Below are positions 30,333-61,841 of a stretch of 64,000 bases of DNA, piece by piece. How positions within the stretch are numbered: the stretch's first letter is position 1; the number at the start of each line of letters is the position of its first letter. The stretch covers positions 124,001 to 188,000 of the IMG/VR virus record IMGVR_UViG_3300021057_000274, one strand, 5' to 3'. The notes beneath the pieces are model-generated. The model searched no databases and was not told where the DNA came from. It saw nothing but the letters and a program-made list of their open reading frames with translations. The translations under genes were made by a program, and so were the position numbers.

Positions 30333-30616
30333 AGCTAAGCGACATCTACGAGAAGTCAGCATACATCGCCACGGGGAACTCTGAGGATCTGGACGATAAC
30401 CTCACGACCTTTGAGGTGATCGGCGAAAACGAAGAGGAAGCATACAGCGTCGTCATCACCAAGGACGGCAAGGTCGACAGCGTCAATCCTGAGCCAAATG
30501 CCGATCGCGAGGCGATCATCAAGCCTGCGCTCGATCTGTTCAAAAAGCGCGGACGCGGGTCATACACCGATCTGCCTGCTAGCCAAAACGTCGGCAACAT
30601 CAAGCCAGCCAAGTGA
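30329..30616 (+). CDS. Hypothetical protein, probable internal head protein
   Basis: N-terminus MKLSDIYE; GTGA coupling. Confidence 0.6.
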   Translation: MKLSDIYEKSAYIATGNSEDLDDNLTTFEVIGENEEEAYSVVITKDGKVDSVNPEPNADREAIIKPALDLFKKRGRGSYTDLPASQNVGNIKPAK

Positions 30617-32154
30617 AGCTCCTCATCTTCACCGCCGAACCGAAGAACTTCGTCCCTGTCAAGATCGCAGAGGCGGCGGAGAAGGCTGGGTTCGAGTCGG
30701 CGGAGATCATCGACGTCACCCGTCTCATCCTCCTCGACTGGGAGAACGCTGAGATCTTCCGCGTCGTTCACGCCGAGCAGAGAGAGGGCGAGGAACCTGT
30801 CGAGCCCCAGATCGAGACTCTCCAGATCGACGAGAGCACCGTCATCATCCCGAGGCTCAACGAGCACCACCTCGACGTCAAGCTGTCAATCCTCAAGCGC
30901 GCCCAGCTCAAGGGCGCGAAGATGGTCAACTCGCCCGAGAGCATGGAGCTCTGCAACGACAAGCTGATGTCACAGGTGCTGCTGTCGAGCAATGGGGTCA
31001 TGACGCCAATCACTTACACGATTCCAGGCTGCGAGAAGTCGCTCGAGCCAGCGGTGATGCACATCGAGAAGTCAGGCATGAAGTTCCCGATGATCCTGAA
31101 GACCCTCCGAGGCACCCACGGAATCGGAGTCATGCGCGTCGACTCAAAGGCGTCGCTGACCTCGGTCGCACAGACGCTCTGCAAGGAAGGACTAGACGTT
31201 CTCATCCAGCAATACATCGAGCACGAGCACTCGTTCCGTATGATCATGGTCGGTCAAGAGCTGCTCGCCGCAAACAAGCGGGGTCAACCCAAGGACAAGG
31301 GCGAGTTTAGAACGAACGCGCATCTCGGCTCTCAGACGGAGGCCTACGAGCCTACCCAAGCCGAGATCGACCTCGGCAAGAAGATTGTCGCTCTCTTCGG
31401 CTGTAACTTCTGCGCGATCGACTACATCATGCTAGACGACAAGATCATCGTTCTTGAGGTCAACGGCTCACCAGGGCTCGAGAACATCCAGTCGAACTAC
31501 CCCGACCGTGATCTCCCGGCAAAGGTCGCAGAGTACGCGTTGACCTTCGTGAACGGGATCGCCGATCTAAAGACTGATGCCAACAGCGCTCCACCGACCG
31601 AGGACGAGATGGCGGTGGACAATCAAGCTCTGGCCGAACCTCCTGCTCTAGCAACTGATCTGGCGCCAGTCGAGCCAGCCACTGAGCCTACCGCGCCGAC
31701 GACGGAGCCGACCAACGACCGCTCTCCCGGCCAGATCAGCGAGGTTGAGCAGGTGATCATTCACCAGATCATCGAGGAACCTGTTGAGGCTAGGGTTGAC
31801 ACTGGAGCTAAGACGTCGTCACTTCACGTCGACAAGCTCGAGTTTGATGATGACTGGGCGAAGTTCACTCGTAAGGATTCTACCTTCAAGGTTCCTGTCG
31901 CACGCATCATCAAGGTCAAGAACGTCCACGGCGGTGACAACAGCCGCCGACCGGTGGTCAAGCTCGACGTCACGATCAACGACAAGCGTTATAACCGAGT
32001 TGAGTTCTCGCTCAACAACCGTGAGCAGATGAAGTATCAGGTGATCGTCGGTCGCAACCTGATTGAACTAGTCGGACTTCCTGTGACCGTCAAGACCAAC
32101 TCTGAACAGGCCCAAGACGCTCCTGAGGCGAAGGTCGAGATCGAAGAAGAGTAG
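30613..32154 (+). CDS. rimK: RimK-family ATP-grasp ligase fused to a RimB-like retropepsin protease
   Basis: CNDKL, KTLRGTHGIGV, FRTNAHLG, VLEVNGSPG; C-terminal ARVDTGAKTSSLH...IVGRN. Confidence 0.9.
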   Translation: MKLLIFTAEPKNFVPVKIAEAAEKAGFESAEIIDVTRLILLDWENAEIFRVVHAEQREGEEPVEPQIETLQIDESTVIIPRLNEHHLDVKLSILKRAQLKGAKMVNSPESMELCNDKLMSQVLLSSNGVMTPITYTIPGCEKSLEPAVMHIEKSGMKFPMILKTLRGTHGIGVMRVDSKASLTSVAQTLCKEGLDVLIQQYIEHEHSFRMIMVGQELLAANKRGQPKDKGEFRTNAHLGSQTEAYEPTQAEIDLGKKIVALFGCNFCAIDYIMLDDKIIVLEVNGSPGLENIQSNYPDRDLPAKVAEYALTFVNGIADLKTDANSAPPTEDEMAVDNQALAEPPALATDLAPVEPATEPTAPTTEPTNDRSPGQISEVEQVIIHQIIEEPVEARVDTGAKTSSLHVDKLEFDDDWAKFTRKDSTFKVPVARIIKVKNVHGGDNSRRPVVKLDVTINDKRYNRVEFSLNNREQMKYQVIVGRNLIELVGLPVTVKTNSEQAQDAPEAKVEIEEE

Positions 32155-32822: not shown

Positions 32823-32850
32823 TTTACTTCCGCTTCGTCCGTGTTATAAT
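32823..32850 (+). promoter_or_regulatory. Sigma70-like promoter with extended -10
   Basis: TTTACT - 16 nt - TATAAT with TGn extension. Confidence 0.65.
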
Positions 32851-32865
32851 GACTCCAGTGTCATT

Positions 32866-33075
32866 TTGCACGGGAACTGGATGTCTCACGAGATTGAGGT
32901 AAATTACTCGATTCTGAACGGAAGCATCCGAGGGAAGCGGTCATTTCCGCTCATCTCGAAGAAGTCTGGCAAAGCTCTCAGGGCGGTCGCTGAAGCCAAG
33001 GCTCGTCTCATCGTTCAGAAGATGATCAAGTGCGATCCGCAGCAGATCATCATCAATCACCTGTCGATCGGTTAA
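32866..33075 (+). CDS. Hypothetical protein (start may be ATG 32881)
   Basis: Follows the sigma70-like promoter. Confidence 0.5.
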   Translation: MHGNWMSHEIEVNYSILNGSIRGKRSFPLISKKSGKALRAVAEAKARLIVQKMIKCDPQQIIINHLSIG

Positions 33076-33078
33076 ATA
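33073..33078 (+). promoter_or_regulatory. Late promoter core TAAATA, 5 nt before the release factor ATG
   Basis: Direct reading. Confidence 0.6.
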
Positions 33079-33083
33079 GGGAC

Positions 33084-33758
33084 ATGAAGATCCTCATCGA
33101 GATCCGCCCCGGCGAGGGCGGGGACGACGCCAAGCTGCTCGTCCAAGACCAAGGCAAGATCTACCTCCGCTACGCGGAGCGCAACGGCCTGAGTGCGGAC
33201 GTCGATCTCGACAAGGGTTGACTGACGATCGAGCTGTCTGGAGAGGATAAGCTCGTCAAACCTCTCCTCCTCGAGGCCGGGGGACACCGTTGGCAGAGAA
33301 TTCCACCGACGGAGAAGCGAGGCCGAGTCCACACCAGCACCGTTACCGTCGCGGTCTTACAGCTCGGTGACGAGAGAACCTATCGTCTTCGTGATCAAGA
33401 CATCCAGGTCTTCACGAAGCGCGGAAGCGGCCCGGGTGGGCAGCATCGTAACAAGACCGAATCGGACGTCGTCATGCGCCACCTTCCGACAGGTCTAGAG
33501 GCGATCGCGACTAGCAAGTCACAGCACAACAACCGGAAGACCGCTCGAGCGATCCTAGAGGCTCGGGTTGCCGCGCTCTACGCCGAACGAGCTGCTGGAG
33601 CTAGAGACGCAGAGCGAGCGAAGCAAGTAGGAAGCGGAATGCGCGGCGACAAGATCAGAACCTACCGGGAGAGAGACGACGTCGTCACTGATCACCGAAC
33701 AGAGCGAAAGTGCCGACTTAGTGACGTGCAACGAGGGCTGCTTGAGCGACTTAGGTGA
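33084..33758 (+). CDS. Class I peptide release factor, RF1-like and lacking domain 1, with in-frame TGA at 33219-33221
   Basis: IEIRPGEGGDDA...DKG*LTIELSG...EAGGHRWQRIPPTEKRGRVHTS...GPGGQHRNK; one frame throughout (224 aa with readthrough). Confidence 0.9.
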
Positions 33759-34876: not shown

Positions 34877-35278
34877 TTACTCCGGCTTCTCTGGTTTGTC
34901 TTTCTTGTCTTCCTTCTTCGTCGGCTCTGGCGTCGGAAGAGTTTGCCCGCCCGTAAACTTCTTGTCAAGGAAGCCACGGAACCACTTTCCGAAGCCCTCG
35001 ACGCCTGCGATGAAGAGGAGCCAGAGACCGAAGAGCTCCCAGCCCAGACTCAACATGTAAGCGTACCAGCCGATGAAGAGCGTCGAGAAGACGATGCCGA
35101 CACAGATCCCGAGCTTGTTCGCGTCACCGTATTGCTTTCCGTCAGCTCCGCGACTTGAGAAGAAGTGCCACCACTCGATCGGGTTTTCGGGGTCGTTGAT
35201 GACTCGCACGAGCCCCCAGACAAAGACGAGGAGCAAGACTACTCCCATGATCGCTTCTAGTTCTAACGTCAGTTCCAT
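34877..35278 (-). CDS. Putative holin
   Basis: Three TM segments, charged C-terminal tail, upstream of the spanins. Confidence 0.55.
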   Translation of the reverse strand: MELTLELEAIMGVVLLLVFVWGLVRVINDPENPIEWWHFFSSRGADGKQYGDANKLGICVGIVFSTLFIGWYAYMLSLGWELFGLWLLFIAGVEGFGKWFRGFLDKKFTGGQTLPTPEPTKKEDKKDKPEKPE

Positions 35279-37287
35279 TATGCGTATCTGATCCAGATGT
35301 CGCCGTCGACTCCGCCTGAGGGGCCGCTGGTGGAGACCGTCTTAGCCGAGTTGCCCCAGAGGGTCGCGTTGTTCGCGTTCGTCGCTGTCGTTGCGTTGTT
35401 CGCGTTCGTCGCCGTGGTAGCCGTCGTCGCCGTGTCAGCGTTGCCTTGTAGCGCTCCGATGAAGGTGGTCGCAGTAACGTTACGGGCCGCAAAGTCGCCG
35501 TTGTTGTCACGGAGCACGATCTTATTAGCGGTGTTGGTGGAGACCGCCTCGATCGTCGCACTGTTTTGCTGGCCGGTGATGCTGCTTGCGGTGGTGGCCG
35601 TCGTCGCGGACGTAGCCGTCGTCGCGGACGTAGCCGTCGTCGCGTTGCCTTGCAACGCCCCGATGAAAGTCGTCGCTGTGACGATGCGAGCGGCGAAGTC
35701 GCCGTTGCTGTCACGGAGCACGATCTTGTTAGCGGTATTGGTAGAAACCGCCTCGATCGTCGCGCTGTTTTGCTGATTCGTGATCGTCGACGCGGTGGTC
35801 GCCGTCGTCGCGTTGCCCGTAACGTTGCCCGTGACGTTGCCGGTCAAGTTGCCGACGACGTTGCCCGTGACGTTGCCAGTGAGAGGCCCGAGGAACACGG
35901 TCGCGGTGATCTCACGAGCTGCGAAGTCTCCGTCGGCGTCACGAAGGACGATGCGATCGCCGATGTTATTTGCGGTCGCGGTGATCGTCGCGCTGTTGGC
36001 TTGGCCGACGATGCTCACCGCTGACATCGTCTGATCTGCCCAACCCACGCGAATCGCGGCGCCGTGTGAGGATGTAAAGTTCCAACGCGACCCGTCCCAC
36101 GCGATCGAGTTGGTGTAGGTGGACCCGTGCGACGTCGTGTACAAGTTGGTCGCGTTCGTCGCGGTAGTCGCGGTAGTCGCCGTGGTAGCAGTGGTCGCGG
36201 TGGTCGCGGTGGTCGCGGTGGTAGCTGTAGTCGCGGTAGTCGCCGTGGTAGCTGAGGTGGCGTTCCCCGTGAGCGCTCCGACGAACGTGGTCGCTGTAAC
36301 CACGTTCGCTGAAAAGTCACCGTTGCTGTCTCGCAGAACGATGCGGTTTGCGGTGTTGGTCGACGTCGCGACTATCGTCGCGCTGTTCGCTTGATTGGTG
36401 ATGGTACCAGCCGTAGTTGCGGTGGTCGCGGAAGTCGCCGTGGTAGCCGTCGTCGCGGTCGTTGCGGTGGTAGCGTTAGTCGCGTTAGTGGCATTAGTTG
36501 CGTTAGTCGCATTGGTAGCATTCGTCGCAAAGTTGACCCGGGTCGGGCCGATGGGACGCCACCTCAGAGTCGTGCCGTCGTATCGTACGGTGAACGACTC
36601 GGCGGCGGCGATCGCAAAGTCCTCAGAGCCGTTGAGAGCGAAGCGGTTAGCCGCGGTCGAGTTGGTGCTCTCGTTCTTGAGCACGATCGGGAACGAGCCG
36701 ATGTTGTGGATGATCAAGACCCGCTCAGGCGTCGTCGGCACGATGCCCGTGATGTCACGGCTGGCGTCAGTCGAGACGCGCAAGATGTTAGCTGTATCGA
36801 GGCCTGTAGGGTTGTAATTGTTTTGATTACCCGTGATCTGGGCCGGCGAGATGACCTCAGGGAGCGTGAAGAGGGCGACCTGAGACTCGACGGCTACCCA
36901 GTTTCCACCGTTGTCATAGACCTTGAGAACGTCATTGACCGTGTCATACCAGAGGTCGCCAGAGTAGTGGGTTCCAGTCGGCTCGGCTCCAGCGTCGATC
37001 CTGCGATACGCGAGGTCGTTCCACGCAGCTGTGTGGTAGACGTAGAGGCGCTTGTCGCTCGACTTGAACCAGAGCTGTCCGGTGGTCGGGGCGGCTGGAG
37101 CGTTCGCCGAGGCCGAGTGCTCGAGCATCCGGATCAAATTTTCCTGGAGCTTCTCGCCCCAGTTTGCTACGCCCTTTCCTGTGAGGGTCAGTGACGTCGA
37201 CGTAGTGTCGACGGTGCGGGCGGAGAGCACAAACGGGGGCTTGAGCCCGTCGTCTGACCAATTCAGGGTATAGTTGTTGGTGACCAC
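35278..37287 (-). CDS. Tail fibre protein 1
   Basis: N-terminal module shared with fibre 2; NAT/TAT repeats; four IVLRDxxGDF modules; GTG 37287 inferred as start. Confidence 0.85.
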   Translation of the reverse strand: MVTNNYTLNWSDDGLKPPFVLSARTVDTTSTSLTLTGKGVANWGEKLQENLIRMLEHSASANAPAAPTTGQLWFKSSDKRLYVYHTAAWNDLAYRRIDAGAEPTGTHYSGDLWYDTVNDVLKVYDNGGNWVAVESQVALFTLPEVISPAQITGNQNNYNPTGLDTANILRVSTDASRDITGIVPTTPERVLIIHNIGSFPIVLKNESTNSTAANRFALNGSEDFAIAAAESFTVRYDGTTLRWRPIGPTRVNFATNATNATNATNATNATNATTATTATTATTATSATTATTAGTITNQANSATIVATSTNTANRIVLRDSNGDFSANVVTATTFVGALTGNATSATTATTATTATTATTATTATTATTATTATTATNATNLYTTSHGSTYTNSIAWDGSRWNFTSSHGAAIRVGWADQTMSAVSIVGQANSATITATANNIGDRIVLRDADGDFAAREITATVFLGPLTGNVTGNVVGNLTGNVTGNVTGNATTATTASTITNQQNSATIEAVSTNTANKIVLRDSNGDFAARIVTATTFIGALQGNATTATSATTATSATTATTASSITGQQNSATIEAVSTNTANKIVLRDNNGDFAARNVTATTFIGALQGNADTATTATTATNANNATTATNANNATLWGNSAKTVSTSGPSGGVDGDIWIRYA
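35380..36530 (-). repeat. Tandem 9-nt (TAT/NAT tripeptide) repeats and four ~45-aa module repeats in fibre 1
   Basis: Visible in translation; two modules nearly identical in DNA (~35460-35580 and ~35660-35775). Confidence 0.9.
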
Positions 37288-37291
37288 ACGG

Positions 37292-37297
37292 TATTTA
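37292..37297 (-). promoter_or_regulatory. Late promoter core TAAATA, 4 nt before GTG
   Basis: Direct reading. Confidence 0.65.
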
Positions 37298-37314
37298 TCT
37301 CCGTGAGGACTCAC

Positions 37315-46492: not shown

Positions 46493-46498
46493 TATTTA
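46493..46498 (-). promoter_or_regulatory. Late promoter core TAAATA, 4 nt before ATG
   Basis: Direct reading. Confidence 0.65.
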
Positions 46499-49400
46499 CT
46501 CTGTGGTGACTAGCGCGGGATCAACGTTGTCGACGATCGCGTAATCGGCTTGCATGTAATCGGCCTGCATCAGAGAGCCGGTTTGTACGAACTTCTCGCT
46601 CTCGTAGGCCCACTCACCGACGCGCTCCTGGATGATCTCAGCGGCCGGGCTTCCGCTCGTGTTGACCGTCCAAGTGGTTCCTGTCTTCTGAGAGACTCCA
46701 GAAGCAGCTCCCGGCCGCAGGTCAAGCGCGTTGAAGTTCGCTCCCCACCCGTCGCTCGGCGACGTCGACGCGTTAGTGAGAGAGCCGGTGATGAAAAAAT
46801 CGCCCTCGCGGCCGTGGTTGAGACGATAGTTGGCTGGCGCCTCGCCCTCATCGAGGTGGAGGTGAATCACTGGGGTGCTAAGGTCGGCGATGAGACCCTT
46901 CAGCTTGAACGGGCTGACCGGCTTACCGTCCTCGGTGATCACCTTTCGACGATTAGCCTCAATTCCCCAGTCGTAGTAGACGTTCGGCCAGAAGAGAAGC
47001 TCGCCGATCGCGCCGTTGAAGGTGTTTTGTCCGTCTGAGCGAGCTCCGATCACCCAGTCATTGACGGTGTAGTCGATCGTGTCGTCGGTATAGGTCGTGA
47101 TGAGCGAGAGCTCAGAGTCATCGCCAACGTAGAGCTTGCGCTTAGCGGTGTCGGAGAGGTCAAATGATCCCATGATGCACAGCCAGGCCGCGCCAGAGTT
47201 GTACGTCGCTGGCGTTGATACGTTGAGGATCACGGTGCCCGCGGTGTTAAAGGCTCGCACGGTCCATCTGCTTGACGCGTAAGACAACTGGAGTCCCTTC
47301 GGGGTTGAGCTACCCGGGGTGTCAGCCGCTGAGAAGACGTTCTGTTGAGTGCCAGGCCCGATGAGCGAACCGTCAAGTCTCACCCAAGCCACGAAGGTAC
47401 CGAGCTTAGAGTCGACCGATCCCGGGATCGGGTCGTTCGACTTCATGTACACGGTTCCGTCAAAGTCAGCACCATCCATCAGGTAGATCTCGTCCTCGTC
47501 GCTGATCGACCCTCTGACATCTACCTGGTAGACCTTCCCGGCAAGCTTGTCGGTGTTCACGTGAGAGACCCCGATCGCGACTCGAGCCGTGCTCTTGTAG
47601 ATGCTAGAGTTAATCGCGCCGAGCGTTGGGCTTCCGATCAGGTCCCAGAGTGACCCGTCCTCTGACTTGTAGAACTTGAGAGTTCCGCCCACTCCGCTCG
47701 CGTCGTTCTCTAGCGATACCCGCACCCAGTGAGTCGAGTTGTTGGCGAAGCTCAACAGATCGCTCGTGAACGAGTGCTCCGCGACGTTGTCTGGCGACCA
47801 CTTAAAGCCGATCCTGCCGGTAGTGGTGATGTACATCTTGTACGAGAGCTGGCCCGTCTCATACTTGCTGATGATCGTTTGATCGGTTCCAGGAGTCCAG
47901 TCATCTAGCTTCAAGTGAGCTGAGATTTGGATGTCACCCGTGACGTCGTGGCGACGACCAGTCGGTGACGTGACGTGGTTGCCGTCCGTGCCAGGAAGGA
48001 GCAGGTGGTGGAAGTTCTTGGTCGGGGAGTAGAGACCTTGAACTTCGATCTCCTCCTCAGCTTGCAAGATCTGCACGATGCTGAGAAAGTCGGTCGCCGT
48101 CACGCTGACGTGGGGATTGTACTGAGCGTTCTGCTCGATCCTCAGCTCGACGTACGTGTTCTTCTTCGGGATGTTGTCTAGGACGAAGGTGTAGTACTCT
48201 CCGTGCTCGTTGACCGCCTTCTTGATCTTCCCGAACTGGATCAGCTGCATCGGAGCGTGGTTGCTGGGCACCGGATCCGTCAAGACGCCGTGTTGGGTCT
48301 TCAGGTCGAGATTGACGAGAAAGTCAGAGACGTCGTGGGCCTGGCCGAGAAGACCAGCGTACGAGCCCGGGTCAGTCAGGAGGTAGTAAGGCGTCCAATC
48401 ACCGTCGATCGTGAACGCGATCTTGCCGTTGTCGAACGGAATCTTGAAGCTCGCGTAGTAGAGCGGGCCGAGAGCCGGCACGGTCTGCTGAACTTGAAAC
48501 TTCCAGGGACCGATCGCGGTCACCTCCCAGACGTCGCCGTCGGCCGAGGTGTTGTAGATGTTCCTGACCGTCAAGCTTCCCTTCCGCAGAGACGCGTCGG
48601 CGATCGAGTTGTAGAACGTCACCGTGCTCGTCTCGTCCGACGCGTCAACCACGGTGATCGTGAACCTGTCCGCGTCATCGGTGTCCGGGTTCTCGTCCTC
48701 GTTGTCGTACGAGAGATCGTCGTAGCCTCCCTCGTCGAAGTTTCTCGTGACGCCGAAGTCGAACGGTGAGAGAAAGCGCAAGAAGAGCCGATCGGCCTTG
48801 AAGAGATTGACGTCGATCTTCTTCGCGTCGTAGCCAGAGTTTCCGAGGATGCTGTTCGGGAGAAACTGGATGAACGAGCGCGAGCGATCGACCACGAAGT
48901 CGGTCTGAAACACCGCGGCCACGCCGTCGACGCGTACGCGGCACCCCTGGTGGTGAGGAACGCGATAGCGGCGTGTGTCTTGCCAATAGACCGAGACAGG
49001 CTGGAGCTGACGATAAGCGGCGAAGAGCGAGTAGAACGACGAGTCTAAGCCGCCCGGGACCATCGCGACCTCGTTGTTTGGGATCGTGTAAGTGCCCGTC
49101 AAGCCGTCAACGCTGAAGTTGCTGCCGAGCCTGGTGAACGTCAGGTACTCGGTCTCCCCGACGAAGACCTTGACCGCCGAGTCTTGAAAGCCGAACGCGA
49201 TCGCCTCGGCCGCGTCGATCGTGAAGTGAATCGAGTACTCGTACTCGTAGACCGTGCCGTTCAAGAAGGACTGGGTGATCTCGACGCGCAGGTCCGAGAC
49301 TCTGGCGGCGACCGCGATCTCGTCATCACCGTTGAAGTGAGAGGAGCTCTGGTCACCTGTCCACGTCTGCTCGCTGTCAGGGATGCCGTTCGTGTTCAAG

Positions 49401-49741
49401 TCAGTCAGGTCAGAGGTAGCCGGATCGTGGCCGTGCGGAGTCTGTCCGAAGTTGAGAGAGTCGTTGAGCGAGAAGCGAGGGAAGATCGCCCACGGGATGT
49501 TGAAGGTCAGGTCGCTCGCGTCGCCGGTCATGATCCGAACTAGGCTCTCGCCCCCTCGGTCAGCCGCGTCCCAGATTCCCTGCATCATCACCTCGGTGAA
49601 CTGCTTCTCCTGCACGTTGACGTGGATGAGCTCCTCGTTGAAGAAGAGCTCTGAGGTCAGGTCGTTCAGCTTCGAGTGGTAGGGCTTGACGTCGTTGAAG
49701 TACCCGACCAGCGACTGGAGCAGCTTAGTGTTGTCGGTCAC
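46496..49741 (-). CDS. Large virion protein with two LamG/concanavalin-like domains
   Basis: YFNDVKPYHSKL N-terminus; THWVRVS..IG and WLCIMGS..IGA..FNGAIGEL patterns. Confidence 0.7.
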   Translation of the reverse strand: MTDNTKLLQSLVGYFNDVKPYHSKLNDLTSELFFNEELIHVNVQEKQFTEVMMQGIWDAADRGGESLVRIMTGDASDLTFNIPWAIFPRFSLNDSLNFGQTPHGHDPATSDLTDLNTNGIPDSEQTWTGDQSSSHFNGDDEIAVAARVSDLRVEITQSFLNGTVYEYEYSIHFTIDAAEAIAFGFQDSAVKVFVGETEYLTFTRLGSNFSVDGLTGTYTIPNNEVAMVPGGLDSSFYSLFAAYRQLQPVSVYWQDTRRYRVPHHQGCRVRVDGVAAVFQTDFVVDRSRSFIQFLPNSILGNSGYDAKKIDVNLFKADRLFLRFLSPFDFGVTRNFDEGGYDDLSYDNEDENPDTDDADRFTITVVDASDETSTVTFYNSIADASLRKGSLTVRNIYNTSADGDVWEVTAIGPWKFQVQQTVPALGPLYYASFKIPFDNGKIAFTIDGDWTPYYLLTDPGSYAGLLGQAHDVSDFLVNLDLKTQHGVLTDPVPSNHAPMQLIQFGKIKKAVNEHGEYYTFVLDNIPKKNTYVELRIEQNAQYNPHVSVTATDFLSIVQILQAEEEIEVQGLYSPTKNFHHLLLPGTDGNHVTSPTGRRHDVTGDIQISAHLKLDDWTPGTDQTIISKYETGQLSYKMYITTTGRIGFKWSPDNVAEHSFTSDLLSFANNSTHWVRVSLENDASGVGGTLKFYKSEDGSLWDLIGSPTLGAINSSIYKSTARVAIGVSHVNTDKLAGKVYQVDVRGSISDEDEIYLMDGADFDGTVYMKSNDPIPGSVDSKLGTFVAWVRLDGSLIGPGTQQNVFSAADTPGSSTPKGLQLSYASSRWTVRAFNTAGTVILNVSTPATYNSGAAWLCIMGSFDLSDTAKRKLYVGDDSELSLITTYTDDTIDYTVNDWVIGARSDGQNTFNGAIGELLFWPNVYYDWGIEANRRKVITEDGKPVSPFKLKGLIADLSTPVIHLHLDEGEAPANYRLNHGREGDFFITGSLTNASTSPSDGWGANFNALDLRPGAASGVSQKTGTTWTVNTSGSPAAEIIQERVGEWAYESEKFVQTGSLMQADYMQADYAIVDNVDPALVTTE

Positions 49742-52700
49742 GAGACGATCCTGACGTCGTTGAGCGAGACGTACGACGTCTTGAAGAAGTCCTTGAGCTC
49801 GGGAGTCTTAGCGAGCGAGTCCTCGAGGACCTCAAAGAAGATCTCGCTCAGCTGCTTCGGGTTGGCGAAGCGCCAGAGGTCGGCCATGAGCTTCTTGATC
49901 TCCGCCGTCGTCGACAGATAAGTGTCGAGCTTGTTGATGTCGAACCCCTCGTATGAGATGTAGTGTGGAACCTTGGCTCCGTCGACGAGCCGGGTCACCT
50001 GTGTATTTAAGATCGTGTACTTGACGGTCTCCCTCGCGATCTTCGGGTCAACCATGATCTGCTCTCCGGACAAGCCGTAGCGGATCGATGACTCGTTGCG
50101 CTGGTCATAGATCTCGCGCACGCTGAACGGGAGCGGATCACCGACCTGCGACTCGCCGCAGAGGGAGTCAGTCAAGGTGTCCCAGAGCTTCTTTGGAATT
50201 CGAGTCGGTTGAAACTTCCGTAGCAAGATCCACTCGGTGTGGACGTTCTTGAGCTCAGCCGTCGGGTCGCTCCGCAGAGTTTGGTCAAGCGTCAAGCGGA
50301 GCTTGTACGAGTCGTTCTCCTTGACGTGCCGACGCAGTCCTTGAACCGACAGGATCGCGTATCGGTTCGGGCGGCCGTCAAGCTGGTTGTACCACTTGAG
50401 CCCCTGAGGCACCGCGTAGAGCCCATCGTGGTTGGTCAGCAGCGCCGCGATCTGATTTACCGCGAGCGCCTTGCCGCGCGCCGGGCTGCGCTTCTCCTTG
50501 ACCCAGAAGTAGTAGACGTTGACGCTCAATCCGCTCACCTCATCGCGGCGCAGCTCGCGCACGTGCGGGAAGTCATGCTTGTACTGCACTAGCTTGTACG
50601 GATCCGTGTCGGCGACGTCAGGGTCAAACTCGAGGTCCTCGGTCGTAACCTCAGCCGGAACTAGCTTGAAGGTGATCACGTCACCCTCTGAGGCGATCGC
50701 CTCATCGGTAACTTGTACAAAGGCGTCTACACCGTTCTGGGAAACCGTCCAGTCCGCGTGCCTGATCATCGTACCGTTTAGATATAGGTAACCCCGTTCC
50801 TTTACATCCGCCGCAAGCATGGAAGCGTACGTAAACTTGTCCTCGAGGAAATCGTTCAGCGTGTCGCTGCCGGTGACGAAGTACTTGGCCTCTCTGAAGT
50901 CGTCAACCACCTTCGTCCAGGTCGTCCAGGTGGAGCGATACGGGGTGTAATCGGCGCCTCCAAACCAGGTCCAAGGGTCGGCCATGTGGCTAGAGATGTC
51001 GCTCGCGAGGTCGATCAAGAAGTCGTCGACCTCCACCCACTCTCCCGCGACGGGAGAGTACGGGTTCAAGTTCTTGTTCGTAACCAGGTTCGGGTTTTCG
51101 ATCGGATCATTCCAAGCGATCCACCCGTTAGTGGTCAAGTCGGCGGTGGCGTCCAGGGTAGTGTAGGTTGTCACTCCGTCGACGAACGCGATCGGCGAGA
51201 AGACCGTGACCGTGCTGCGGAGGTAGATGTCGTGGGCCGCGTTGCCGATCGCGGTCGCCATCGTTGACTTCCGCTGCGCCTCGGACGGTACTCCGCCGAT
51301 CGGGGCTGGCCACGTGTCGGCGTGGCCGTACGTGACCGTGTAGAAGATCTTGATCCCGAGCTGGTCGAAGAAGTAAGAGTCCTTGGTGCCGGCCTGGACA
51401 GGCGTGTCATGCACCTCGATGATCTGGTTCTTTCCCGACGGAGCCTGGAGCTTGATGTAGTCGACCCCGCCGTCCGTGAAGTTAGACAGGTTGTAGTCAC
51501 CTAGCTCGCCGTTGAACGCGTAGGTCTGGTCATCGATCTCGAGCGTGAACGTGGTGACGAAGTTAGAGGACGCGAACGTGGGGCCACCCGTGTAGGCCGC
51601 GGCGGTTCCAACCGAGATCGTTGACGACTCCGAGGTGACCTCTGCCATCCCGAAGATGCGGGCGAGGTTCGCGTCGGTCTTCGTCGTCGAAGTGTAGATC
51701 GCGCCTGCGATCTTCGTCCCCCTCACGACGCCGTAATCCTCAAACTTGCCAGCGTTGACGACGAGGGTGCCGTGGCCGTTCGTCAAGAAGGTCTTAAGCT
51801 TGGCTGGCTGATACGCGAGAAACTTGATCACTCCGTCCGTCGGGTTCTTGACCTTCCAAGCGACGACGCGCTGCCACCAGACCCGATCTCTCGTGACCAG
51901 GTAGCTCTGCGCGACCTCACCCTCGGTCTCGCTCCCGTACTCCGCCGGCGGCACCTCAGACCTCACCCACTCGTAGACGTTTACCTTCGAGAAGTCAGCG
52001 AGAGCGCCCCAGTGACGAAGACGATCATTGACGTCCTCGAAGATCTTCGAGTCATGGTACGGCTTCCAGTCTAGGTCGGCGGTGTCCCACCACAGCTTGC
52101 CGACCTGCTTCTCTCCCCAGGTCCTGAGCGGATCGCTGTTTCGGCCCAAGCTCGTTTGGTTGTACTTCGCGGGATCCGCCGCCTGCTCGTAGCTGATCAG
52201 CGAGTGCGCCTCCGGGTGGTGGTGCCCGCGCGCGGGGTCCCACCAGATGATGTCGCTGCGCACGAGATCACCGGTCTTGTAGTTGTAGAGAGCGACGGGT
52301 GAGTATTGCTCGAAGTTCGGCCCGTAAGCAACGACCTTGATGATTCGATTGAGGAGAGCGACGTCGTTGATCTTGATCGTTGAGGCGTTGACGCGCTCGA
52401 ACTTCGCGGTCGAGTACTCAGCTGGATCTGTGGCGGCGACGTAGTCCCCGCGCTCTCGATAGACGCCGCTGCTCTCGGTCTCGTCAGCGAGCTCGACGTT
52501 GATCAGCTCGAAGCAATCAGCTCTCACCGGATTTCCGCTCTTGTCGGTGATCGAGTAGAGCTTGTCGAGAGAGTCGGGAACGATCGTCATCTCAGCGAGG
52601 ACCTTGAGCTGAAACGACGTGAGCGCCTTGAGGTCGTCGTACTTGTGCCACCGTGTCTCGTCGTCAGGGAAGACGATGATCATGTTGGTCGCGTCAAAGA

Positions 52701-55700
52701 GCTCGATCCCCTCGGCCGACGTCAGGTCATAGATCGTGCTGAAGTCGAACAGCGACTCGTCGTACTCCCCCTCGTCGAACCTCTTCATCGCGAACAGCGA
52801 CTCATCCTCCTCGAGGAAGAGGTAGCTCGTGCGCTCACCGGTGCAATCATCCGCCTCGACCCGCAGCTCAGGGAAGAGCCGCTTGCGGGCGTCGCCGTAC
52901 TCAGCGTAGCGGTACGCCCAGTACTCGTCGAGGTTCGCTGTCTCGAACTTGGAGGAGTTGATGAAGGCGTTGAGGGAGAGGTTCGTGCCCTTGTTAGCGA
53001 TCAACCCTTGCCAGAACTTGAACTCGGAGATCTCAGACGTCTCACGATCCTCAAAGTACCTCTTGCGATCGAAGCCGAGGATCGAGCGAGCGCGATCGAT
53101 CTCGGGGCTCGCTGCGACGTTAGGGTCGTAGAGCTTGCTCAACCCGTTGACCGAGCTCTCGATGTTCTTCTTGACCTCATCCCCGACGATGAAGTGACCG
53201 CCGAAGTCGAGCTTTCCGGTGAACGCGGCTTGCCGGCGACCGGAGAAGAGGACCTTCTTGGCCTGCTGCCCGAGGAACGGATCGTAGATCAGCGCCTTGC
53301 CGACCGTGTAGTTCTCGAGGAGGATGACGTGCTCGTACTCGCTCGTGAGCGCGTGGAGAGTGAAGACTGGCTCGTCGAAGACCAATTGCGTGACGTCATC
53401 CTGGCGGAAGACGCGCACCTGGTCGGGCCGGAGCTTCTTCTTGTGCTGAGTGAGGATCGAGCAAACGGTTTCTTGCTCGAGGCCGAGCGCCTCAAAGACG
53501 TTCGAGAGCATCCCGCGCGGCGTCATGAACCACGCCTTGCGGTAGAACGGGTTGAAGAGGAACGATGACCCGGCGTCGACGCCAGAGAACTGCTGCACGA
53601 TGAACTTCTCTGCCAGGAACTGGTAATCGATCGTGCGGTGCCACTGCGGGTCGATGATCGGGTTCTCGACGTCGGTGAATCTCCACCCCTCGTCGTGCAT
53701 CTTGTCGGCGTACCCGAAGATGAAGTTTAGGAAGTTCTGGATGCCGGTGACCAGAAACGGAGTGCGATAATTGACGACCGCTGAGGGGGTCTTGTAGCGC
53801 TTCCACGACATCGAGGCTTGGAGCCCGTCAAGCGCCGTGAAGGTGGTGTGCTCGCCGTTGAGATCGAACTGATACCAAGCGAGACCCGGGCGCTCGCTGT
53901 TGTACGCGTCAACTCGGAAGATCCAGTCCTCTCCGTAAGATCCGGTCGGCCCGATCGCCGGAACAGAGACGTTGTTCGAGAAGACCGTCGCGCCGCGATG
54001 CACCAGCTGAACGCGTAGCGCGTTGATCCACGAGCTAGTGTGAAACTTGTTCTCCTTCAGCCGCACCGCGTAGGCCGGCGTCTCGATCACCTCAGAGCCG
54101 ACGCGCATCTTGAGCGAGTCGGTGTTGATCAAGCCGGCGCAACGATAGCTAAGCTTCGGGGTCCAGCTCTTGAGAAGGGTCGAGTTGAGCGAGATCGCGA
54201 CGTCCTCACCGAAGTTGCGCGAGTACTGCACGTAGATCTGGTTGAGGCCCTCGGCCCTGAAGTACGTCTGTGGGACGACCTCCACGGTCAGCTCGGGCAC
54301 TTCAGCGTCGATCTTGACCTTAAACGTGTCACCCCAGAAGAAGCCGCGCTTCTTCTCCGTCAGCGTTACGTTGATGAACGCGTTAGAATACGTGAAGTTG
54401 GTGATGAATTGAGGAGTGATGATCCCCGTGCCTGTCACCTTGAAGATCCCGTCCTGTCGACTGACGCACGTGAGCACGTACTCCTGGTCGAAGCCCGGGA
54501 GCGAAGTCATCGTCGCCGTGATCCAGGTCGCGTCGATCAGTTCGGTGAGCGGCTCACCGTGGAGAGAGATGTCGACCGGCGCCTTCTTCTTGCCGACGTC
54601 GGCGTAGAACGTGTACTCGCCGAGCGTCTTTTGCTTCGTGCCCCACGTGTGGTAGACGTAGCTGAGAGGATCAAGCTTGAAGAAAACCTTCTGCTCGGAG
54701 TACAGGAAGTCGAGCGTCTTTCGCCAGAAGATCTCGATCGGCCCCATGTCGCCGAAGAAGTACTTGTCAGCGACGCCTGTCGGCGGAACGCTGAGGAGCG
54801 ACTCTGGGTCCGTCGAGTAGGGCGGGAGGAGCTCCGCGGTTGCGGTCTTGACGCTGAACTTTTGCGGCCGTCCCAGCAAGACCAAGCGAGCTCGCAAGAA
54901 GGTAAGCACCTCAAAGTCGGTCCAGAAGATCGGGAGCCACTCGGTAGTTCCGCCCGGGAGAGCACCTGCGCCGACCAGCGCAGCCATCAGCGTCGCCTCG
55001 TCGGCGTATCCCGCGAGGATCCAAGGCTCGAGGTCGGGGCGCGACGTCCCGTAGACGTCGAGGTAGACCTCTTGCCACGCGGCGTGCTGTGACGTCGTGC
55101 CGGGGATCGTTGCAGAGATGTAATTCCAGGTGAACGCGTTTGCCTGGTCGAAGATCGTGCTGTAGACGTCAGGAACGTTGTACTTTGCTCCGAACCTCTC
55201 AAACTCGAGCTTCATGAAGTCAAAGTAGTTTACCGAGGCCCTGAGCGGAGCCGGATCAAACGCTTGAGTCAACGTTGGGCAGTGATCGAAGAGCTCTTGC
55301 TCGATGACTAGCGTCAAGTTTTGCGCGAGGAGGTCGAGCTTGACGAGCGTCCACGGAGCCCCGACTTGAACGACGGAGGAGCCGATCTCGACCCAAGCGC
55401 CGTTGAACTGCCAGAGGACGTTGTTGAGACGATCGTAGGAGTAGTCGCCGTTCTCGGCGTCATCGGGGCGCTCTCCCTGGTCCGAGATGACCCGGTAGAT
55501 GAAGAGCTCCTTCGTCGACGTCTTGTACCAAAACTGCCCGCGGTAGGGACGAGCTGGAAACTCGGTGCCGATCACTCCGGGAGTCTCGTTACCGAAGGTG
55601 CGCTTGAAGCGCTTCGTCACGATCTTCTTGAGCACGTCGTCCGAGGTCGGCAACAGCTTCGACCGGTGGCCGTCGTGGTGGATGAGCATCTCGAGGTTGA

Positions 55701-61300: not shown

Positions 61301-61841
61301 GTTGGTATTGCTGAAAGATCGTGTTGTCGACCTGAAACGACTTGAGCGGATGCCCGAACTGCTGGGTGAGCACCCGGTTCAAGACGATGAAGAACTGCTC
61401 ATGCCACAGCGGATTGTTCGCGTCGTTCCAGCGAATGACTCGGTTCGCGAGCGAGTTACCCTGTGAGTCCCGAATGTCCTCAGAGATCGAGATCGACGTG
61501 ATCTTGACCAGTCCCCGGAGCGGAATGTTTCTAGTCGCCGAGTACGAGATCATCTTCGCCATGCGGAGGATGCTCTGCTTTCGCTGGGCGTCCGTGATCG
61601 CGTTCTCGTGACCGATCAGATCGGTCCGGTACGCCATCAGCTCCGCGACGTAGGCGAACGTCGAGATGAGAGCCATCGTCTGGCTCGTCTCGATGTAGTC
61701 GTTGAAGTTCTCTGGGTAGTAGAACTTGAGGTAGTCGATCAACGATTGCTTGACCGCGTCATAGTCGTACGCGGTGAAGTTGATCTCCTCAAAAGCCTTA
61801 TAGACTTTTTCCCAGGACTCGGCCGCGGTGGAGAGATGCAT
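58350..61841 (-). CDS. gp6: Baseplate wedge subunit (T4 gp6-like, extended)
   Basis: FTAYDYDAVKQSLIDY..FNDY..AYVAELMAYRTD..AQRKQSILRMAKMISY; RMVNGEDY. Confidence 0.85.
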   Translation of the reverse strand: MHLSTAAESWEKVYKAFEEINFTAYDYDAVKQSLIDYLKFYYPENFNDYIETSQTMALISTFAYVAELMAYRTDLIGHENAITDAQRKQSILRMAKMISYSATRNIPLRGLVKITSISISEDIRDSQGNSLANRVIRWNDANNPLWHEQFFIVLNRVLTQQFGHPLKSFQVDNTIFQQYQLKNILESDNNRSSFRNGVLKLKAPVNGQDLSFELVPADVDESGAFERAPNPNDFFSILYLDDGYGYSSDTTGFMMYTKQGTLQKLVHVFDTKLLDRVLEIGLNNINDVDVWVQKVDSRGEILEHWENVPSVVGRNLAFNNVATRTKYSVETLENDQIRLIFGDGDFADIPTGVFHIWVRQSESGSATVAKNEIANENATFLYTSKLGRQESCTLTYSLTAPLQNSAPSEDIEHIRKVAPGVYFTQNRMVNGEDYNSFPLSDPSILRLKSINRTYAGESKGILVNDASGKYRNVKIFGNDLRMYYEISAETTVSQISPRSLIDEVIEPILSEPGIYNLITYAFSISASPFNLALVRPRTRFVEDSGLVLSDGFQVMEKTEIQGLLDRHWYGEPDSTVLLDSNLSESSSNSKTAYGVVNGDTDKRIYDANLKMVTKNTLTGVYTLVSNPGSVSGLQITGSQKRFGIAFDPIRTFGSTLKIVPEDTTTITVDAFTSARIDQSAGKEETWTIEILDADGNFAVYGSVTGDTGNGQIGENYDNGILSFLIDFPTADVDREIQIGDAFIIVVVTVGSTLTPTLHKRNLQGRFKMIDDSALSSTPETEAYSLDSLPASWVMLVERTDDSNGNLLYWTITKRNFKLIAESPTTKFFFERSEPVIDPETKTRVFDTVRLLKSNLDAARAAPLGEDHLYSVISDVNYTNGDTNINAISVTPADPTQLTFSGDGAIQNPEFLKLFSSSDYVYFTKDDAGKLTPVKRTLFIETLTYTDDVSGKYVRRRGRDGLYFMWQHFARHDHLLDPTSTNIIDMYILTRGYYSRVRNFVKGIEAVEPLPPSSLELRSTYRDTILSKMMSDTVIMHSGKIKYLFGDAARPELRGRFRIVISPAAKMTGNQIRARALDVIEDYFSIEKWNFGQSFYATDLCSQIHKDLGNEISSAVLVPSYPTNYFGDLFYLRSAADEIFVSAASLENIEIIEGIDKSTLKQKA

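What the first reader, a model, noticed from the sequence alone, without database searches (positions are those of the whole stretch)
33084..33758. RF1-like release factor interrupted by one in-frame UGA: candidate readthrough-controlled switch
Seen: ATG 33084 runs 45 codons to GGT-TGA-CTG (33219-33221), then continues in the same frame through GGHRWQRIPPT and GGQ to 33758. Both halves align colinearly with RF1, a Trp or aromatic residue would fit (DKG*LTIELSG), and the next in-frame ATG is downstream of GGQ, so an active protein needs readthrough or a non-canonical restart. TGA ends many other genes here and long late ORFs are intact in code 11, so this is not genome-wide recoding. Known: PxT marks RF1 (UAA/UAG), prfB autoregulates through an internal UGA-C, and UGA-C is a weak terminator. 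Inference: the factor is made only when UGA termination is poor, as a sensor of host RF2 limitation or as negative feedback if this domain-1-less factor also reads UGA. Alternatives are a recent nonsense mutation or a sequencing error.
Basis: partly seen in the sequence, partly recalled or inferred. Interest (0 to 1): 0.85.

Follow-up and report, generated by a model that had tools for sequence, protein, structure and literature searches.

The report
Phage release factor gated by UGA
A jumbo phage carries a shortened RF1-type translation release factor whose gene is interrupted by an in-frame UGA. That stop is conserved in distant relatives, so the factor can only be made when ribosomes read through a stop codon, an unreported variant of the self-regulating trick known from bacterial RF2.

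Summary
ATG 33084 is followed by 45 codons, TGA at 33219-33221, then 178 codons in the same frame with PPT and GGQ, ending at TGA 33756-33758.

It is not a mutation or a sequencing error. Twelve other genes (50-65% identical, synonymous sites saturated) carry a stop at the same column, and both halves are under purifying selection.

The gene belongs to a large family of RF1-like factors that lack domain 1, found in phages and prophages. Almost every member needs recoding:
- 98 distinct genes carry a prfB-like cassette (SD-like, 3 nt, CTT-stop) that needs a +1 frameshift.
- 52 carry an in-frame stop (50 TGA).
- Only 5 are intact.

The in-frame TGAs are followed by A or C in 48 of 50 cases and never by T. 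Real TGA terminators nearby often have T.

TGA is the commonest true terminator in the window, and none of 938 tRNAs next to relatives is a suppressor, so this is not code 4.

Best reading: programmed UGA readthrough, probably by tRNA-Trp, gates synthesis of the factor according to UGA termination efficiency. Whether it senses host RF2, feeds back on itself or simply attenuates is untested. No description was found in the literature searched.

The parts
32823..32850 (+). Promoter-like site (TTTACT, 16 nt spacer, TG-TATAAT) ahead of a 69-aa ORF and the RF gene
   Evidence: This is a consensus match only and is no more frequent than in shuffled sequence, so it is weak evidence.
33078..33082 (+). 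SD-like AGGGA one base before the start codon. The preceding 69-aa ORF stops at 33073-33075, so translational coupling is possible.
   Evidence: Read from the sequence. Inference.
33084..33218 (+). N piece, 45 codons: first strand, recognition helix and second strand of RF domain 2
   Evidence: PCRF profile positions 101-138, E 1e-07. prfA model positions 105-143. RF1 2fvo residues 87-125. pN 0.31 against pS 0.76 among 12 relatives. Secondary structure is taken from the model of the intact relative P0112.
33111..33122 (+). GEGG motif at the N-terminal tip of the helix. By homology with RF1 this element contacts the first base (U) of the stop codon.
   Evidence: Aligned to GTGG of T. maritima RF1. 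The role in codon recognition rests on my knowledge of RF1-ribosome structures and was not tested.
33219..33221 (+). In-frame TGA, the recoding site. The -1 codon is GGT (Gly) and the +4 base is C (33222).
   Evidence: There is a stop at the same column in L002-L004, L006-L010, L162, L170, L209 and L241. The +4 base is A or C in 48 of 50 in-frame TGAs of the family, against 89 of 172 real TGA terminators nearby (p = 6e-10).
33222..33755 (+). C piece, 178 codons: rest of domain 2, then domain 3 (GGQ) and domain 4 of an RF1-type factor
   Evidence: prfA NF001859 E 5.8e-49, against prfB 2.2e-28 and prfH 4.5e-18. PDB RF1 E 2.7e-34. No in-frame start before 33474.
33303..33311 (+). PPT tripeptide (CCA CCG ACG), at the place of the PxT 'anticodon' of RF1
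   Evidence: PPT occurs in most family members, with variants PPN, PPS, SPT, PAT and PET.
33435..33443 (+). GGQ catalytic motif (GGT GGG CAG)
   Evidence: Invariant in alignments A1 and A3.
33756..33758 (+). True terminator of the gene: TGA followed by T
   Evidence: The relatives' C-termini align here. All six readthrough-type relatives that also end in TGA have T at +4.

Best explanation
The gene encodes a 224-residue RF1-type class-I release factor without domain 1. Its synthesis requires programmed readthrough of the UGA at 33219-33221. Most ribosomes terminate there on host RF2 and release a 45-residue fragment. A fraction decode the UGA, most likely with near-cognate tRNA-Trp(CCA), and continue in frame through PPT and GGQ. 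The yield of the factor is therefore inversely coupled to how efficiently UGA is terminated in the infected cell. This is the same logic as the prfB frameshift, realised as readthrough.

Shown: the stop is real, conserved, in a leaky context and specific to this gene. Both halves are under selection. The break lies inside the domain-2 sheet. No independent start exists for the second half. Sister clades use a prfB-like +1 frameshift cassette at a stop codon in the same region.

Inferred: that readthrough is how the stop is passed, that Trp is inserted, and that the biological purpose is sensing or feedback. By its PPT and Gln/Thr recognition residues the factor should read UAA and UAG, not UGA. 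My preferred version is therefore cross-regulation. When host RF2 is limiting, the phage makes an RF1-type factor that takes over UAA and UAG termination (47% of the window's genes) and frees RF2 for UGA (53%).
For: - Stop confirmed.
- Twelve further genes with 50-65% identical proteins keep a stop at the same column: TGA in 11, TAG in L009.
- Among these genes synonymous sites are saturated (pS 0.76 and 0.82) while pN is 0.31 for the N piece and 0.35 for the C piece.
- Family census, distinct sequences: 98 +1-frameshift genes, all with P-site CTT, stops TGA 76, TAG 19, TAA 3, and a recognisable SD-like motif upstream in 78 of 98, the commonest (GGAGG, 51 of 98) typically 3 nt before CTT. There are 52 in-frame-stop genes (TGA 50, TAG 2) and 5 intact genes.
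- At least 9 switches of recoding type on the tree.
- +4 base of in-frame TGA: A 36, C 12, G 2, T 0. Real TGA terminators in the same loci: A 50, C 39, G 29, T 54 (p = 6e-10). The same genes end in TAA (43), TGA-T (6) or TAG (3).
- Standard code: TGA ends 34 of 64 window genes and 43% of 344 neighbour genes in readthrough-type loci. No locus looks recoded. No other in-frame stop candidate in the window.
- No suppressor anticodon among 938 tRNAs in all loci, and no tRNA in the window.
- In the site-1 clade the stop replaces the Trp of the RF1 motif G-W-K.
- The AF2 model of the intact relative P0112 (pLDDT 86) places the equivalent residue, Phe47, at the start of the third strand of the domain-2 sheet. 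Its best structural matches are ribosome-bound RF1 (TM 0.84-0.87).
- No start codon before 33474.
Against: - There is no direct evidence of readthrough: no proteomics, ribosome profiling or reporter.
- The factor looks RF1-type, so a UGA gate is not classical autoregulation. The purpose is a guess.
- Stop identity at the site switches often between TGA and TAG among close relatives with identical recognition loops (at least 23 changes). This fits 'any weak stop' better than a specific sensor.
- No conserved stimulatory RNA structure follows the stop (z = -0.35), so efficiency may be only a few per cent.
- A subgroup (L036, L088, L188, L202, L218) has two in-frame TGAs 8 codons apart in standard-code loci. 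That is hard to pass by leaky readthrough alone and hints at dedicated decoding in some phages.
- Only 64 kb of the 389-kb genome could be scanned for tRNAs.
- The family statistics are not corrected for shared ancestry, and the +1 codon is also constrained by the protein.
Confidence: 0.7

Rival explanations
1. Dedicated decoding by a phage tRNA. The UGA is read efficiently by a phage-encoded tRNA that lies outside the window. This could be a tRNA(UCA) suppressor, or a tRNA-Trp(CCA) with an unpaired 27:43 pair ('4-bp anticodon stem'). The factor would then appear only after the phage's tRNA set is expressed, making the stop a phage-controlled timer rather than a host-RF2 sensor.
For: - In relatives the RF gene sits inside phage tRNA arrays of up to 34 tRNAs, often close to tRNA-Trp(CCA).
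- 4 of 9 tRNA-Trp genes in readthrough-type loci have 27:43 unpaired (L044, L058, L064, L213), against 0 of 8 in frameshift-type loci and 103 of 912 other tRNAs.
- Such tRNA-Trp variants read UGA in E. coli (PMC13092985).
- The double-TGA subgroup needs efficient decoding.
Against: - No anticodon UCA, CUA or UUA among 938 tRNAs.
- The tRNA-Trp genes in the window's own clade (L006, L007) have normal 5-bp stems.
- The window has no tRNA.
- TGA terminates 53% of the window's genes, so an efficient UGA reader would be costly.
- Numbers are small and L044 and L064 are close kin.
Confidence: 0.15
2. Fixed attenuator. The stop does not sense anything. It only holds expression of a potentially toxic factor to a few per cent. 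The factor may be toxic because, lacking domain 1, it cannot be recycled by RF3.
For: - TGA and TAG interchange freely at the site.
- The leaky context is selected.
- RF overexpression is harmful in B. subtilis (PMC12421855).
- That RFs without domain 1 do not respond to RF3 rests on my knowledge of truncation experiments and was not checked here.
Against: - A weak ribosome-binding site would achieve the same result more cheaply.
- Near-universal use of a stop codon, in two mechanistic forms, specifically in a gene for a stop-codon reader argues for coupling to termination.
- TAA, read by both host factors, is avoided at the site: 3 of 150.
Confidence: 0.1
3. Broken gene or artefact: a recent nonsense mutation, a pseudogene or a sequencing error.
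For: A single contig is the only source of the window (L001). TGG to TGA is one transition.
Against: The stop is at the same column in 12 other genes at saturated synonymous divergence, with both halves under purifying selection. The context is selected.
Confidence: 0.02
4. Other ways past the stop: genome-wide code 4, selenocysteine insertion, ribosome hopping, or two separately made polypeptides that assemble.
For: Public gene callers translated some relatives with code 4, which at first sight looks like TGA = Trp.
Against: - TGA is the commonest terminator here and in relatives, and also ends this gene.
- No SECIS-like or conserved hairpin, and L009 has TAG.
- The codons after the stop encode a conserved strand, so they are translated.
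- No start codon, and the break is inside a beta-sheet.
Confidence: 0.03

Closest known systems
prfB (bacterial RF2) programmed +1 frameshift autoregulation
   Same: A release-factor gene is interrupted by a premature stop in a weak context (UGA-C), so synthesis depends on poor termination. Sister clades of this family carry the same cassette: SD-like GGAGG, 3 nt, CTT, stop, C.
   Different: - The window gene needs in-frame readthrough, not a frameshift.
- The site lies in domain 2, not at codon 26 of domain 1.
- The factor is RF1-type and lacks domain 1.
- The family uses TAG at the site in 19 of 98 cassettes, whereas TAG was found in none of 8,164 prfB genes, and no programmed frameshift was found in prfA (PMC12421855).
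Mimivirus/Megavirus class-I release factor gene (Jeudy et al. 2012, PMC3521657)
   Same: A virus-encoded release factor whose translation passes internal stop codons by recoding, including a readthrough. It was interpreted as bacterial-style autoregulation.
   Different: That factor is eRF1/aRF1-type in a eukaryotic virus and needs both a frameshift and a readthrough in one gene. Here the factor is a bacterial RF1-type in phages, and each gene has one event (two in a small subgroup).
RF1/RF2 genes of stop-codon-recoded phages (Borges et al., bioRxiv 10.1101/2021.08.26.457843)
   Same: Phage-encoded class-I release factors located next to tRNA genes as part of a translation module.
   Different: Those phages reassign TAG or TGA genome-wide in late genes and carry suppressor tRNAs, and their code-change genes are written in standard code. 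Here the genome is standard-code, no suppressor tRNA was found, and the stop is inside the RF gene itself.
PrfH (RF homologue without domain 1, partner of RtcB2)
   Same: Lacks domain 1 and keeps GGQ. Similar size.
   Different: The score against the PrfH model is far below its cut-off (65.5 against 166.65). Among the three adjacent upstream genes scanned, none matched RtcB. The window protein keeps the RF1 codon-recognition elements and resembles RF1 far more closely.
UGA readthrough by near-cognate tRNA-Trp (for example the phage Qbeta A1 protein), and UGA-reading tRNA-Trp variants (Hirsh G24A, 4-bp anticodon stem; PMC13092985)
   Same: A UGA in an A or C context is decoded at low frequency as Trp without a suppressor anticodon. 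In the family's site-1 clade the stop replaces a conserved Trp.
   Different: In Qbeta, readthrough extends a complete protein. Here it is needed to make any functional protein, and the gene product is itself a termination factor. The Qbeta comparison rests on my own knowledge.

Membership tests
RF1 (prfA; NCBIfam TIGR00019 / NF001859) | PCRF and RF-1 domains in RF1 order, with a better score against prfA than prfB | tested here: met
   prfA 167 bits against prfB 99 bits for the C piece, and the N piece also scores best against prfA; best sequence and structure matches in the PDB are RF1.
RF1 (prfA; NCBIfam TIGR00019 / NF001859) | GGQ catalytic motif and PxT codon-recognition tripeptide | tested here: met
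   GGQ at 33435-33443 and PPT at 33303-33311. Gln of HRWQR and Thr of HTS are kept as in RF1.
RF1 (prfA; NCBIfam TIGR00019 / NF001859) | Full-length architecture with N-terminal domain 1, and a score above the equivalog cut-off | tested here: not met
   The protein starts at model position ~105 of 347. Scores are 167 and 32 bits against a cut-off of 400. The upstream frame is closed by stops in nearly all relatives. It is therefore an RF1 derivative, not an RF1 equivalog.
RF1 (prfA; NCBIfam TIGR00019 / NF001859) | UAA/UAG-dependent peptide release on the ribosome | not testable with these tools
   Needs an in vitro release assay.
Programmed stop-codon readthrough gene | In-frame stop conserved at the same column in diverged relatives, with purifying selection on both sides | tested here: met
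Programmed stop-codon readthrough gene | Leaky stop context, distinct from real terminators | tested here: met
   The window has TGA-C. In the family, 48 of 50 have A or C at +4 and none has T, against 89 of 172 for real terminators.
Programmed stop-codon readthrough gene | Downstream stimulatory RNA structure | tested here: not met
   z = -0.35 and no consensus structure. This feature is not required in bacterial cases.
Programmed stop-codon readthrough gene | Readthrough product detected | not testable with these tools
   Needs a reporter assay or mass spectrometry.
prfB-type programmed +1 frameshift | CTT-stop-C slippery site, SD-like element 3 nt upstream, downstream frame +1 | tested here: not met
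   The window continues in frame 0. The feature is met in 98 sister genes, including the closest cellular relatives L081 and L082.
Stop-codon-reassigned (code 4) phage | TGA not used as a terminator, many genes with in-frame TGA, and a tRNA(UCA) | tested here: not met
   TGA ends 34 of 64 genes, there is no other in-frame candidate, and there is no tRNA in the window. The rest of the 389-kb genome was not available.
PrfH | Score above the TIGR03072 cut-off and an adjacent RtcB ligase | tested here: not met
   65.5 against 166.65 bits. Only the three upstream genes were scanned: a RimK-like protein and two without Pfam hits. The genes downstream on the minus strand were not scanned.
ArfB / ICT1 | Score above the NF006718 cut-off, a GGQ domain plus a C-terminal tail, and no codon-recognition domain | tested here: not met
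   29.8 against 100 bits. The domain-2 recognition elements are present.

The most novel reading that the evidence does not exclude
Phages and prophages of many hosts carry a mobile RF1-type factor without domain 1. Its synthesis is wired to the termination efficiency of a stop codon that the factor itself should not read (UGA). This would be a cross-regulatory 'termination load' sensor that couples host RF2 status to phage RF1 supply. In some lineages the gate would be opened by a phage tRNA-Trp(CCA) with a 4-bp anticodon stem, giving a two-component translational timer. The family would also be the first RF1-type genes with programmed frameshifting, including UAG-gated cassettes that are absent from prfB.
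Probability: 0.3. Interest if true: 0.9.

Novelty: new variant of a known kind. Interest (0 to 1): 0.8.

Why it matters
Recoding inside release-factor genes is the textbook case of translational autoregulation. So far it is known for bacterial RF2 (+1 frameshift) and for giant-virus eRF1 homologues. A 2025 survey of more than 12,000 genomes found no programmed frameshift in prfA and never TAG in the prfB motif (PMC12421855).

This window is one member of a large, unannotated phage family that breaks both rules:
- RF1-type genes are gated by an in-frame UGA or by prfB-like cassettes.
- The cassettes use UGA, UAG or UAA.
- The family has switched between the two mechanisms at least 9 times.

It offers a natural series for asking what a stop-codon gate measures. 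It also shows that phages tune termination as well as tRNA supply. Finally, it exposes an annotation problem: public databases list these genes as 176-aa 'PCRF domain-containing' fragments, or as false Trp-containing proteins called with code 4.

Tried and rejected
1. Public 'intact' homologues with Trp at the stop column (P0014, P0044, P0049, P0052, P0057, P0080) were first taken as evidence for TGG. The DNA of P0049 (L241) shows a stop, so the Trp comes from code-4 gene calling on contigs under 2.2 kb. The claim was withdrawn. The other five are inferred to be the same; P0044 had no retrievable DNA.
2. Code 4 or code 15 in relatives: the ORF-density comparison shows no recoded locus, and TGA is a frequent terminator.
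3. SECIS or a stimulatory hairpin after the stop: none found.
4. Synteny: none of 11 window neighbours has a homologue in any relative's locus. The RimK-like neighbour is therefore not part of a conserved module.
5. Close relatives among deposited phage genomes: tblastn gives at most 45% identity, mostly bacterial-type RF1, and the DNA search found nothing relevant.
6. Correlation between the stop used at the site and the tripeptide (PPT, PPN, SPT): none seen.
7. Context in Archangium gephyra (L084): Pfam hits on neighbours are uninformative.
8. Hirsh-type A24 in phage tRNA-Trp: inspected by eye only and inconclusive.
9. Literature: five full-text searches found no description of this family. 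Subscription journals are not covered.
10. Walking along the 389-kb contig to find its tRNAs was judged too costly for the expected return and was not done.

Full report
**1. The observation**

The sequence is as described. ATG 33084 opens a frame of 45 codons that ends at GGT TGA CTG, with TGA at 33219-33221. The same frame continues for 178 codons through GGHRWQRIPPT (PPT at 33303-33311) and GGQ (33435-33443) to TGA 33756-33758.

The first ATG, GTG or TTG in that frame after the internal stop is ATG 33474, which lies beyond GGQ. The second half therefore cannot be made by ordinary initiation.

Both halves match RF1 in order:
- Pfam PCRF: the N piece covers positions 101-138 and the C piece 164-194, followed by the RF-1 domain.
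- NCBIfam prfA: the N piece covers positions 105-143 and the C piece 160-333 of 347. The scores are well above those for prfB, prfH and ArfB but far below the full-length cut-off.
- PDB: T. maritima RF1 residues 87-125 and 152-314.

The protein starts where RF1 domain 2 starts, so domain 1 is missing.

**2. The setting**

The window is positions 124001-188000 of a 389,331-bp viral contig, IMGVR_UViG_3300021057_000274. This is a jumbo phage.
- Genes run on the + strand up to the RF gene and on the - strand after it. The minus-strand genes include ORFs of 2855, 1163 and 1081 aa.
- Under the standard code 90% of the window is coding.
- TGA is the commonest terminator (34 of 64 genes, against TAA 21 and TAG 9). 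It also ends the RF gene itself, there followed by T.
- No other pair of coding stretches is separated by a single stop without its own start.
- There is no tRNA gene in the window.

TGA is therefore a stop in this phage, and the internal TGA is peculiar to this gene.

**3. Relatives**

A search with the second half returned thousands of proteins. Most of the best 120 (57-69% identical) are only 163-197 aa long, which is just the second half. This suggested that the break is common.

I fetched 240 loci from viral, genome and metagenome collections. Each was classified by the frame and content between the N-terminal EIRxGEGG motif and the GGHRWQ anchor.

Excluding ordinary cellular RF1 genes, nearly every member of this family needs recoding. 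Counts are for distinct sequences:
- **+1 frameshift: 98 genes.** The P-site codon is CTT in 98 of 98. The stop is TGA in 76, TAG in 19 and TAA in 3. The +4 base is C in 78. A recognisable SD-like motif lies upstream in 78 of 98; the commonest is GGAGG (51 of 98), typically 3 nt before CTT. This is the prfB cassette, but it sits inside domain 2.
- **In-frame stop: 52 genes.** TGA in 50 and TAG in 2.
- **Intact: 5 genes.**

The window's clade (98% local support) holds the in-frame stop at exactly the window's column in L002-L004, L006-L010, L162, L170, L209 and L241. L009 has TAG there. The clade also contains CTT-TGA-C frameshift genes within a few codons of that column, including L081 (Hydrogenophilales MAG) and L082 (Thiobacillus denitrificans DSM 12475).

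A second clade of 35 genes has the in-frame TGA at another site, where cellular RF1 has the Trp of G-W-K.

On a tree of 159 genes the recoding type changes at least 9 times and the identity of the stop at least 23 times.

**4. A correction**

Some public proteins of 223-249 aa seemed to be intact and showed Trp at the window's stop column. The DNA behind one of them, P0049, has a stop there. The look-up reports that the gene does not translate to the protein under table 11.

These proteins all come from contigs under 2.2 kb, so they were evidently called with code 4. They count as further stop-bearing members, not as TGG alleles. Truly intact relatives have Phe at this column (P0112, P0070).

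**5. Selection**

Among 12 genes of the window's clade, synonymous sites are saturated (median pS 0.76 in the first half and 0.82 in the second). Non-synonymous differences are 0.31 and 0.35. Both halves are therefore maintained as coding, and the stop has survived complete turnover of silent sites.

The context is also selected:
- In-frame TGAs are followed by A (36), C (12), G (2) and never T.
- Real TGA terminators of neighbouring genes in the same loci have A 50, C 39, G 29, T 54 (Fisher p = 6e-10 for A/C against G/T).
- The readthrough-type RF genes themselves end in TAA (43), TGA-T (6) or TAG (3).
- +4 U is the known strong-termination signal (PMC5289835, abstract seen).

These counts are not corrected for shared ancestry, and the next codon is also constrained by the protein.

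**6. Not a changed code**
- In readthrough-type loci, 43% of 344 neighbouring genes end in TGA.
- No locus shows the collapse of ORFs expected for code 4 or code 15.
- In many relatives the RF gene sits inside large phage tRNA arrays, and in three next to a tmRNA gene.
- Among 938 tRNAs in all loci, none has anticodon UCA, CUA or UUA.

**7. Structure**

An AlphaFold model of the intact relative P0112 (pLDDT 86, pTM 0.71) gives a strand, a long helix, then a sheet. The residue at the window's stop column (Phe47) is the first residue of the third strand. The first half therefore supplies two strands and the helix whose GxGG tip, in RF1, contacts the first base of the stop codon (my knowledge of RF1-ribosome structures). 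It cannot be dispensed with.

The model superposes on ribosome-bound RF1 with TM 0.84-0.87 and rmsd 2.4-3.1 Å.

No conserved RNA structure follows the stop. This speaks against selenocysteine insertion and against a structured readthrough stimulator.

**8. Mechanism**

The common principle of the family is that a stop codon in a weak context must be passed to make a termination factor. For the window the only route consistent with the frame is readthrough.

Trp insertion by near-cognate tRNA-Trp is the classical route for UGA in bacteria. It would restore the ancestral residue in the site-1 clade and put an aromatic residue where intact relatives have Phe.

What the gate measures is open:
- By its recognition elements (PPT, the Gln of HRWQR, the Thr of HTS) the factor should read UAA and UAG, so a UGA gate would report host RF2 activity rather than its own.
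- I favour load sharing: when RF2 is limiting, an RF1-type factor takes over UAA and UAG and frees RF2 for the phage's many UGA stops.
- A fixed attenuator, and dedicated decoding by a phage tRNA, remain possible.
- Loci with TAG at the site use TAG somewhat more often as a terminator (32% against 21%).

**9. A lead for the tRNA alternative**

Four of nine tRNA-Trp(CCA) genes in readthrough-type loci have the top pair of the anticodon stem unpaired: L044 (33 nt before the RF gene), L064, L058 and L213. None of eight in frameshift-type loci does.

Such '4-bp stem' tRNA-Trp variants read UGA in E. coli (PMC13092985). A subgroup with two in-frame TGAs (L036, L088, L188, L202, L218) would need efficient decoding.

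The tRNA-Trp genes in the window's own clade are ordinary, and the window's genome could not be scanned beyond 64 kb.

**10. Comparison and novelty**

The closest known systems are these:
- The prfB +1 frameshift.
- The Mimivirus and Megavirus RF gene, which needs a frameshift and a readthrough (PMC3521657).
- RF genes of recoded phages.
- PrfH.

The gene is an RF1 derivative, not an RF1 equivalog, and not PrfH or ArfB.

A 2025 survey reports no programmed frameshift in prfA and no TAG in the prfB motif. This family shows both.

Public annotation calls members 'PCRF domain-containing protein' or 'hypothetical', at 176 aa. Five full-text searches found no description, but subscription journals are outside that library.

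**Verdict:** a real, conserved recoding site, and a new variant of a known kind.

Noticed in passing
window 30613-32154 (+): A 513-aa fusion of a RimK-like ATP-grasp domain (the ribosomal protein S6 glutamylase family) with a Zn_protease/retropepsin-like domain lies two genes upstream of the RF gene. It is a possible second ribosome-directed function, but it is not syntenic with the RF gene in any relative.
   Followed up: partly
L058, L063, L005, L082, L044, L077 (whole loci); tmRNA at L078:7877-8216, L213:4598-4977, L231:4053-4513: In many relatives the truncated RF gene is embedded in same-strand phage tRNA arrays (22-34 tRNAs in 9-12 kb). In three it lies near a phage tmRNA gene. The window has no tRNA within 64 kb.
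   Followed up: partly
L044:5769-5841, L064:1480-1553, L058:4368-4443, L213:828-902: Phage tRNA-Trp(CCA) genes with an unpaired 27:43 pair (C:U, C:U, G:A, A:C) lie next to RF genes that carry an in-frame UGA. The count is 4 of 9 in readthrough-type loci against 0 of 8 in frameshift-type loci. Such tRNAs read UGA in E. coli (PMC13092985).
   Followed up: partly
L036, L088, L188, L202, L218 (for example L036, 69 and 45 nt before the GGHRWQ anchor): A subgroup of the family has two in-frame TGAs eight codons apart (…EH*KEGLVSI*…), at both recoding sites, in loci that otherwise look standard-code.
   Followed up: no
L036:4352-4428 and L036:4904-5323: A tRNA-like gene with an 8-nt anticodon loop (ARAGORN reports the four-base anticodon 'ccta'; Rfam tRNA 44 bits) and a GOLLD RNA (188 bits) lie just upstream of the RF gene. 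L005:2602-2697 has another odd tRNA, 'acca', 96 nt long.
   Followed up: no
P0049 / L241:370-1050; by inference P0014, P0044, P0052, P0057, P0080: Public protein collections hold 'full-length' versions of these genes with Trp at the stop, because short contigs were translated with code 4. Long contigs hold only the 163-197-aa second half.
   Followed up: yes
L031, L045, L052, L059, L071, L075, L084 (Archangium gephyra chromosome), L090 and others: prfB-like cassettes with TAG (19 of 98) or TAA (3 of 98) at the shift site. Close sisters often differ between TGA and TAG. In prfB, TAG was never seen.
   Followed up: partly
window 35278-37314 (-): A 678-aa protein with long runs of T-A-T / N-A-T triplet repeats. 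A short DNA match falls in a 'hyaluronase tail fiber protein' of an uncultured Caudoviricetes record. It is probably a tail fibre.
   Followed up: no
window 49738-58305 (-), 58350-61841 (-), 46496-49741 (-): Very large uninterrupted ORFs (2855, 1163 and 1081 aa) in the minus-strand block. They were not characterised and served only as evidence that the standard code holds.
   Followed up: no
window 33084-33758: The base composition by codon position of the RF gene (C piece GC1/2/3 = 0.69/0.48/0.63) departs from the window's typical 0.55/0.38/0.78. Together with the lack of synteny this suggests a horizontally acquired cassette.
   Followed up: no
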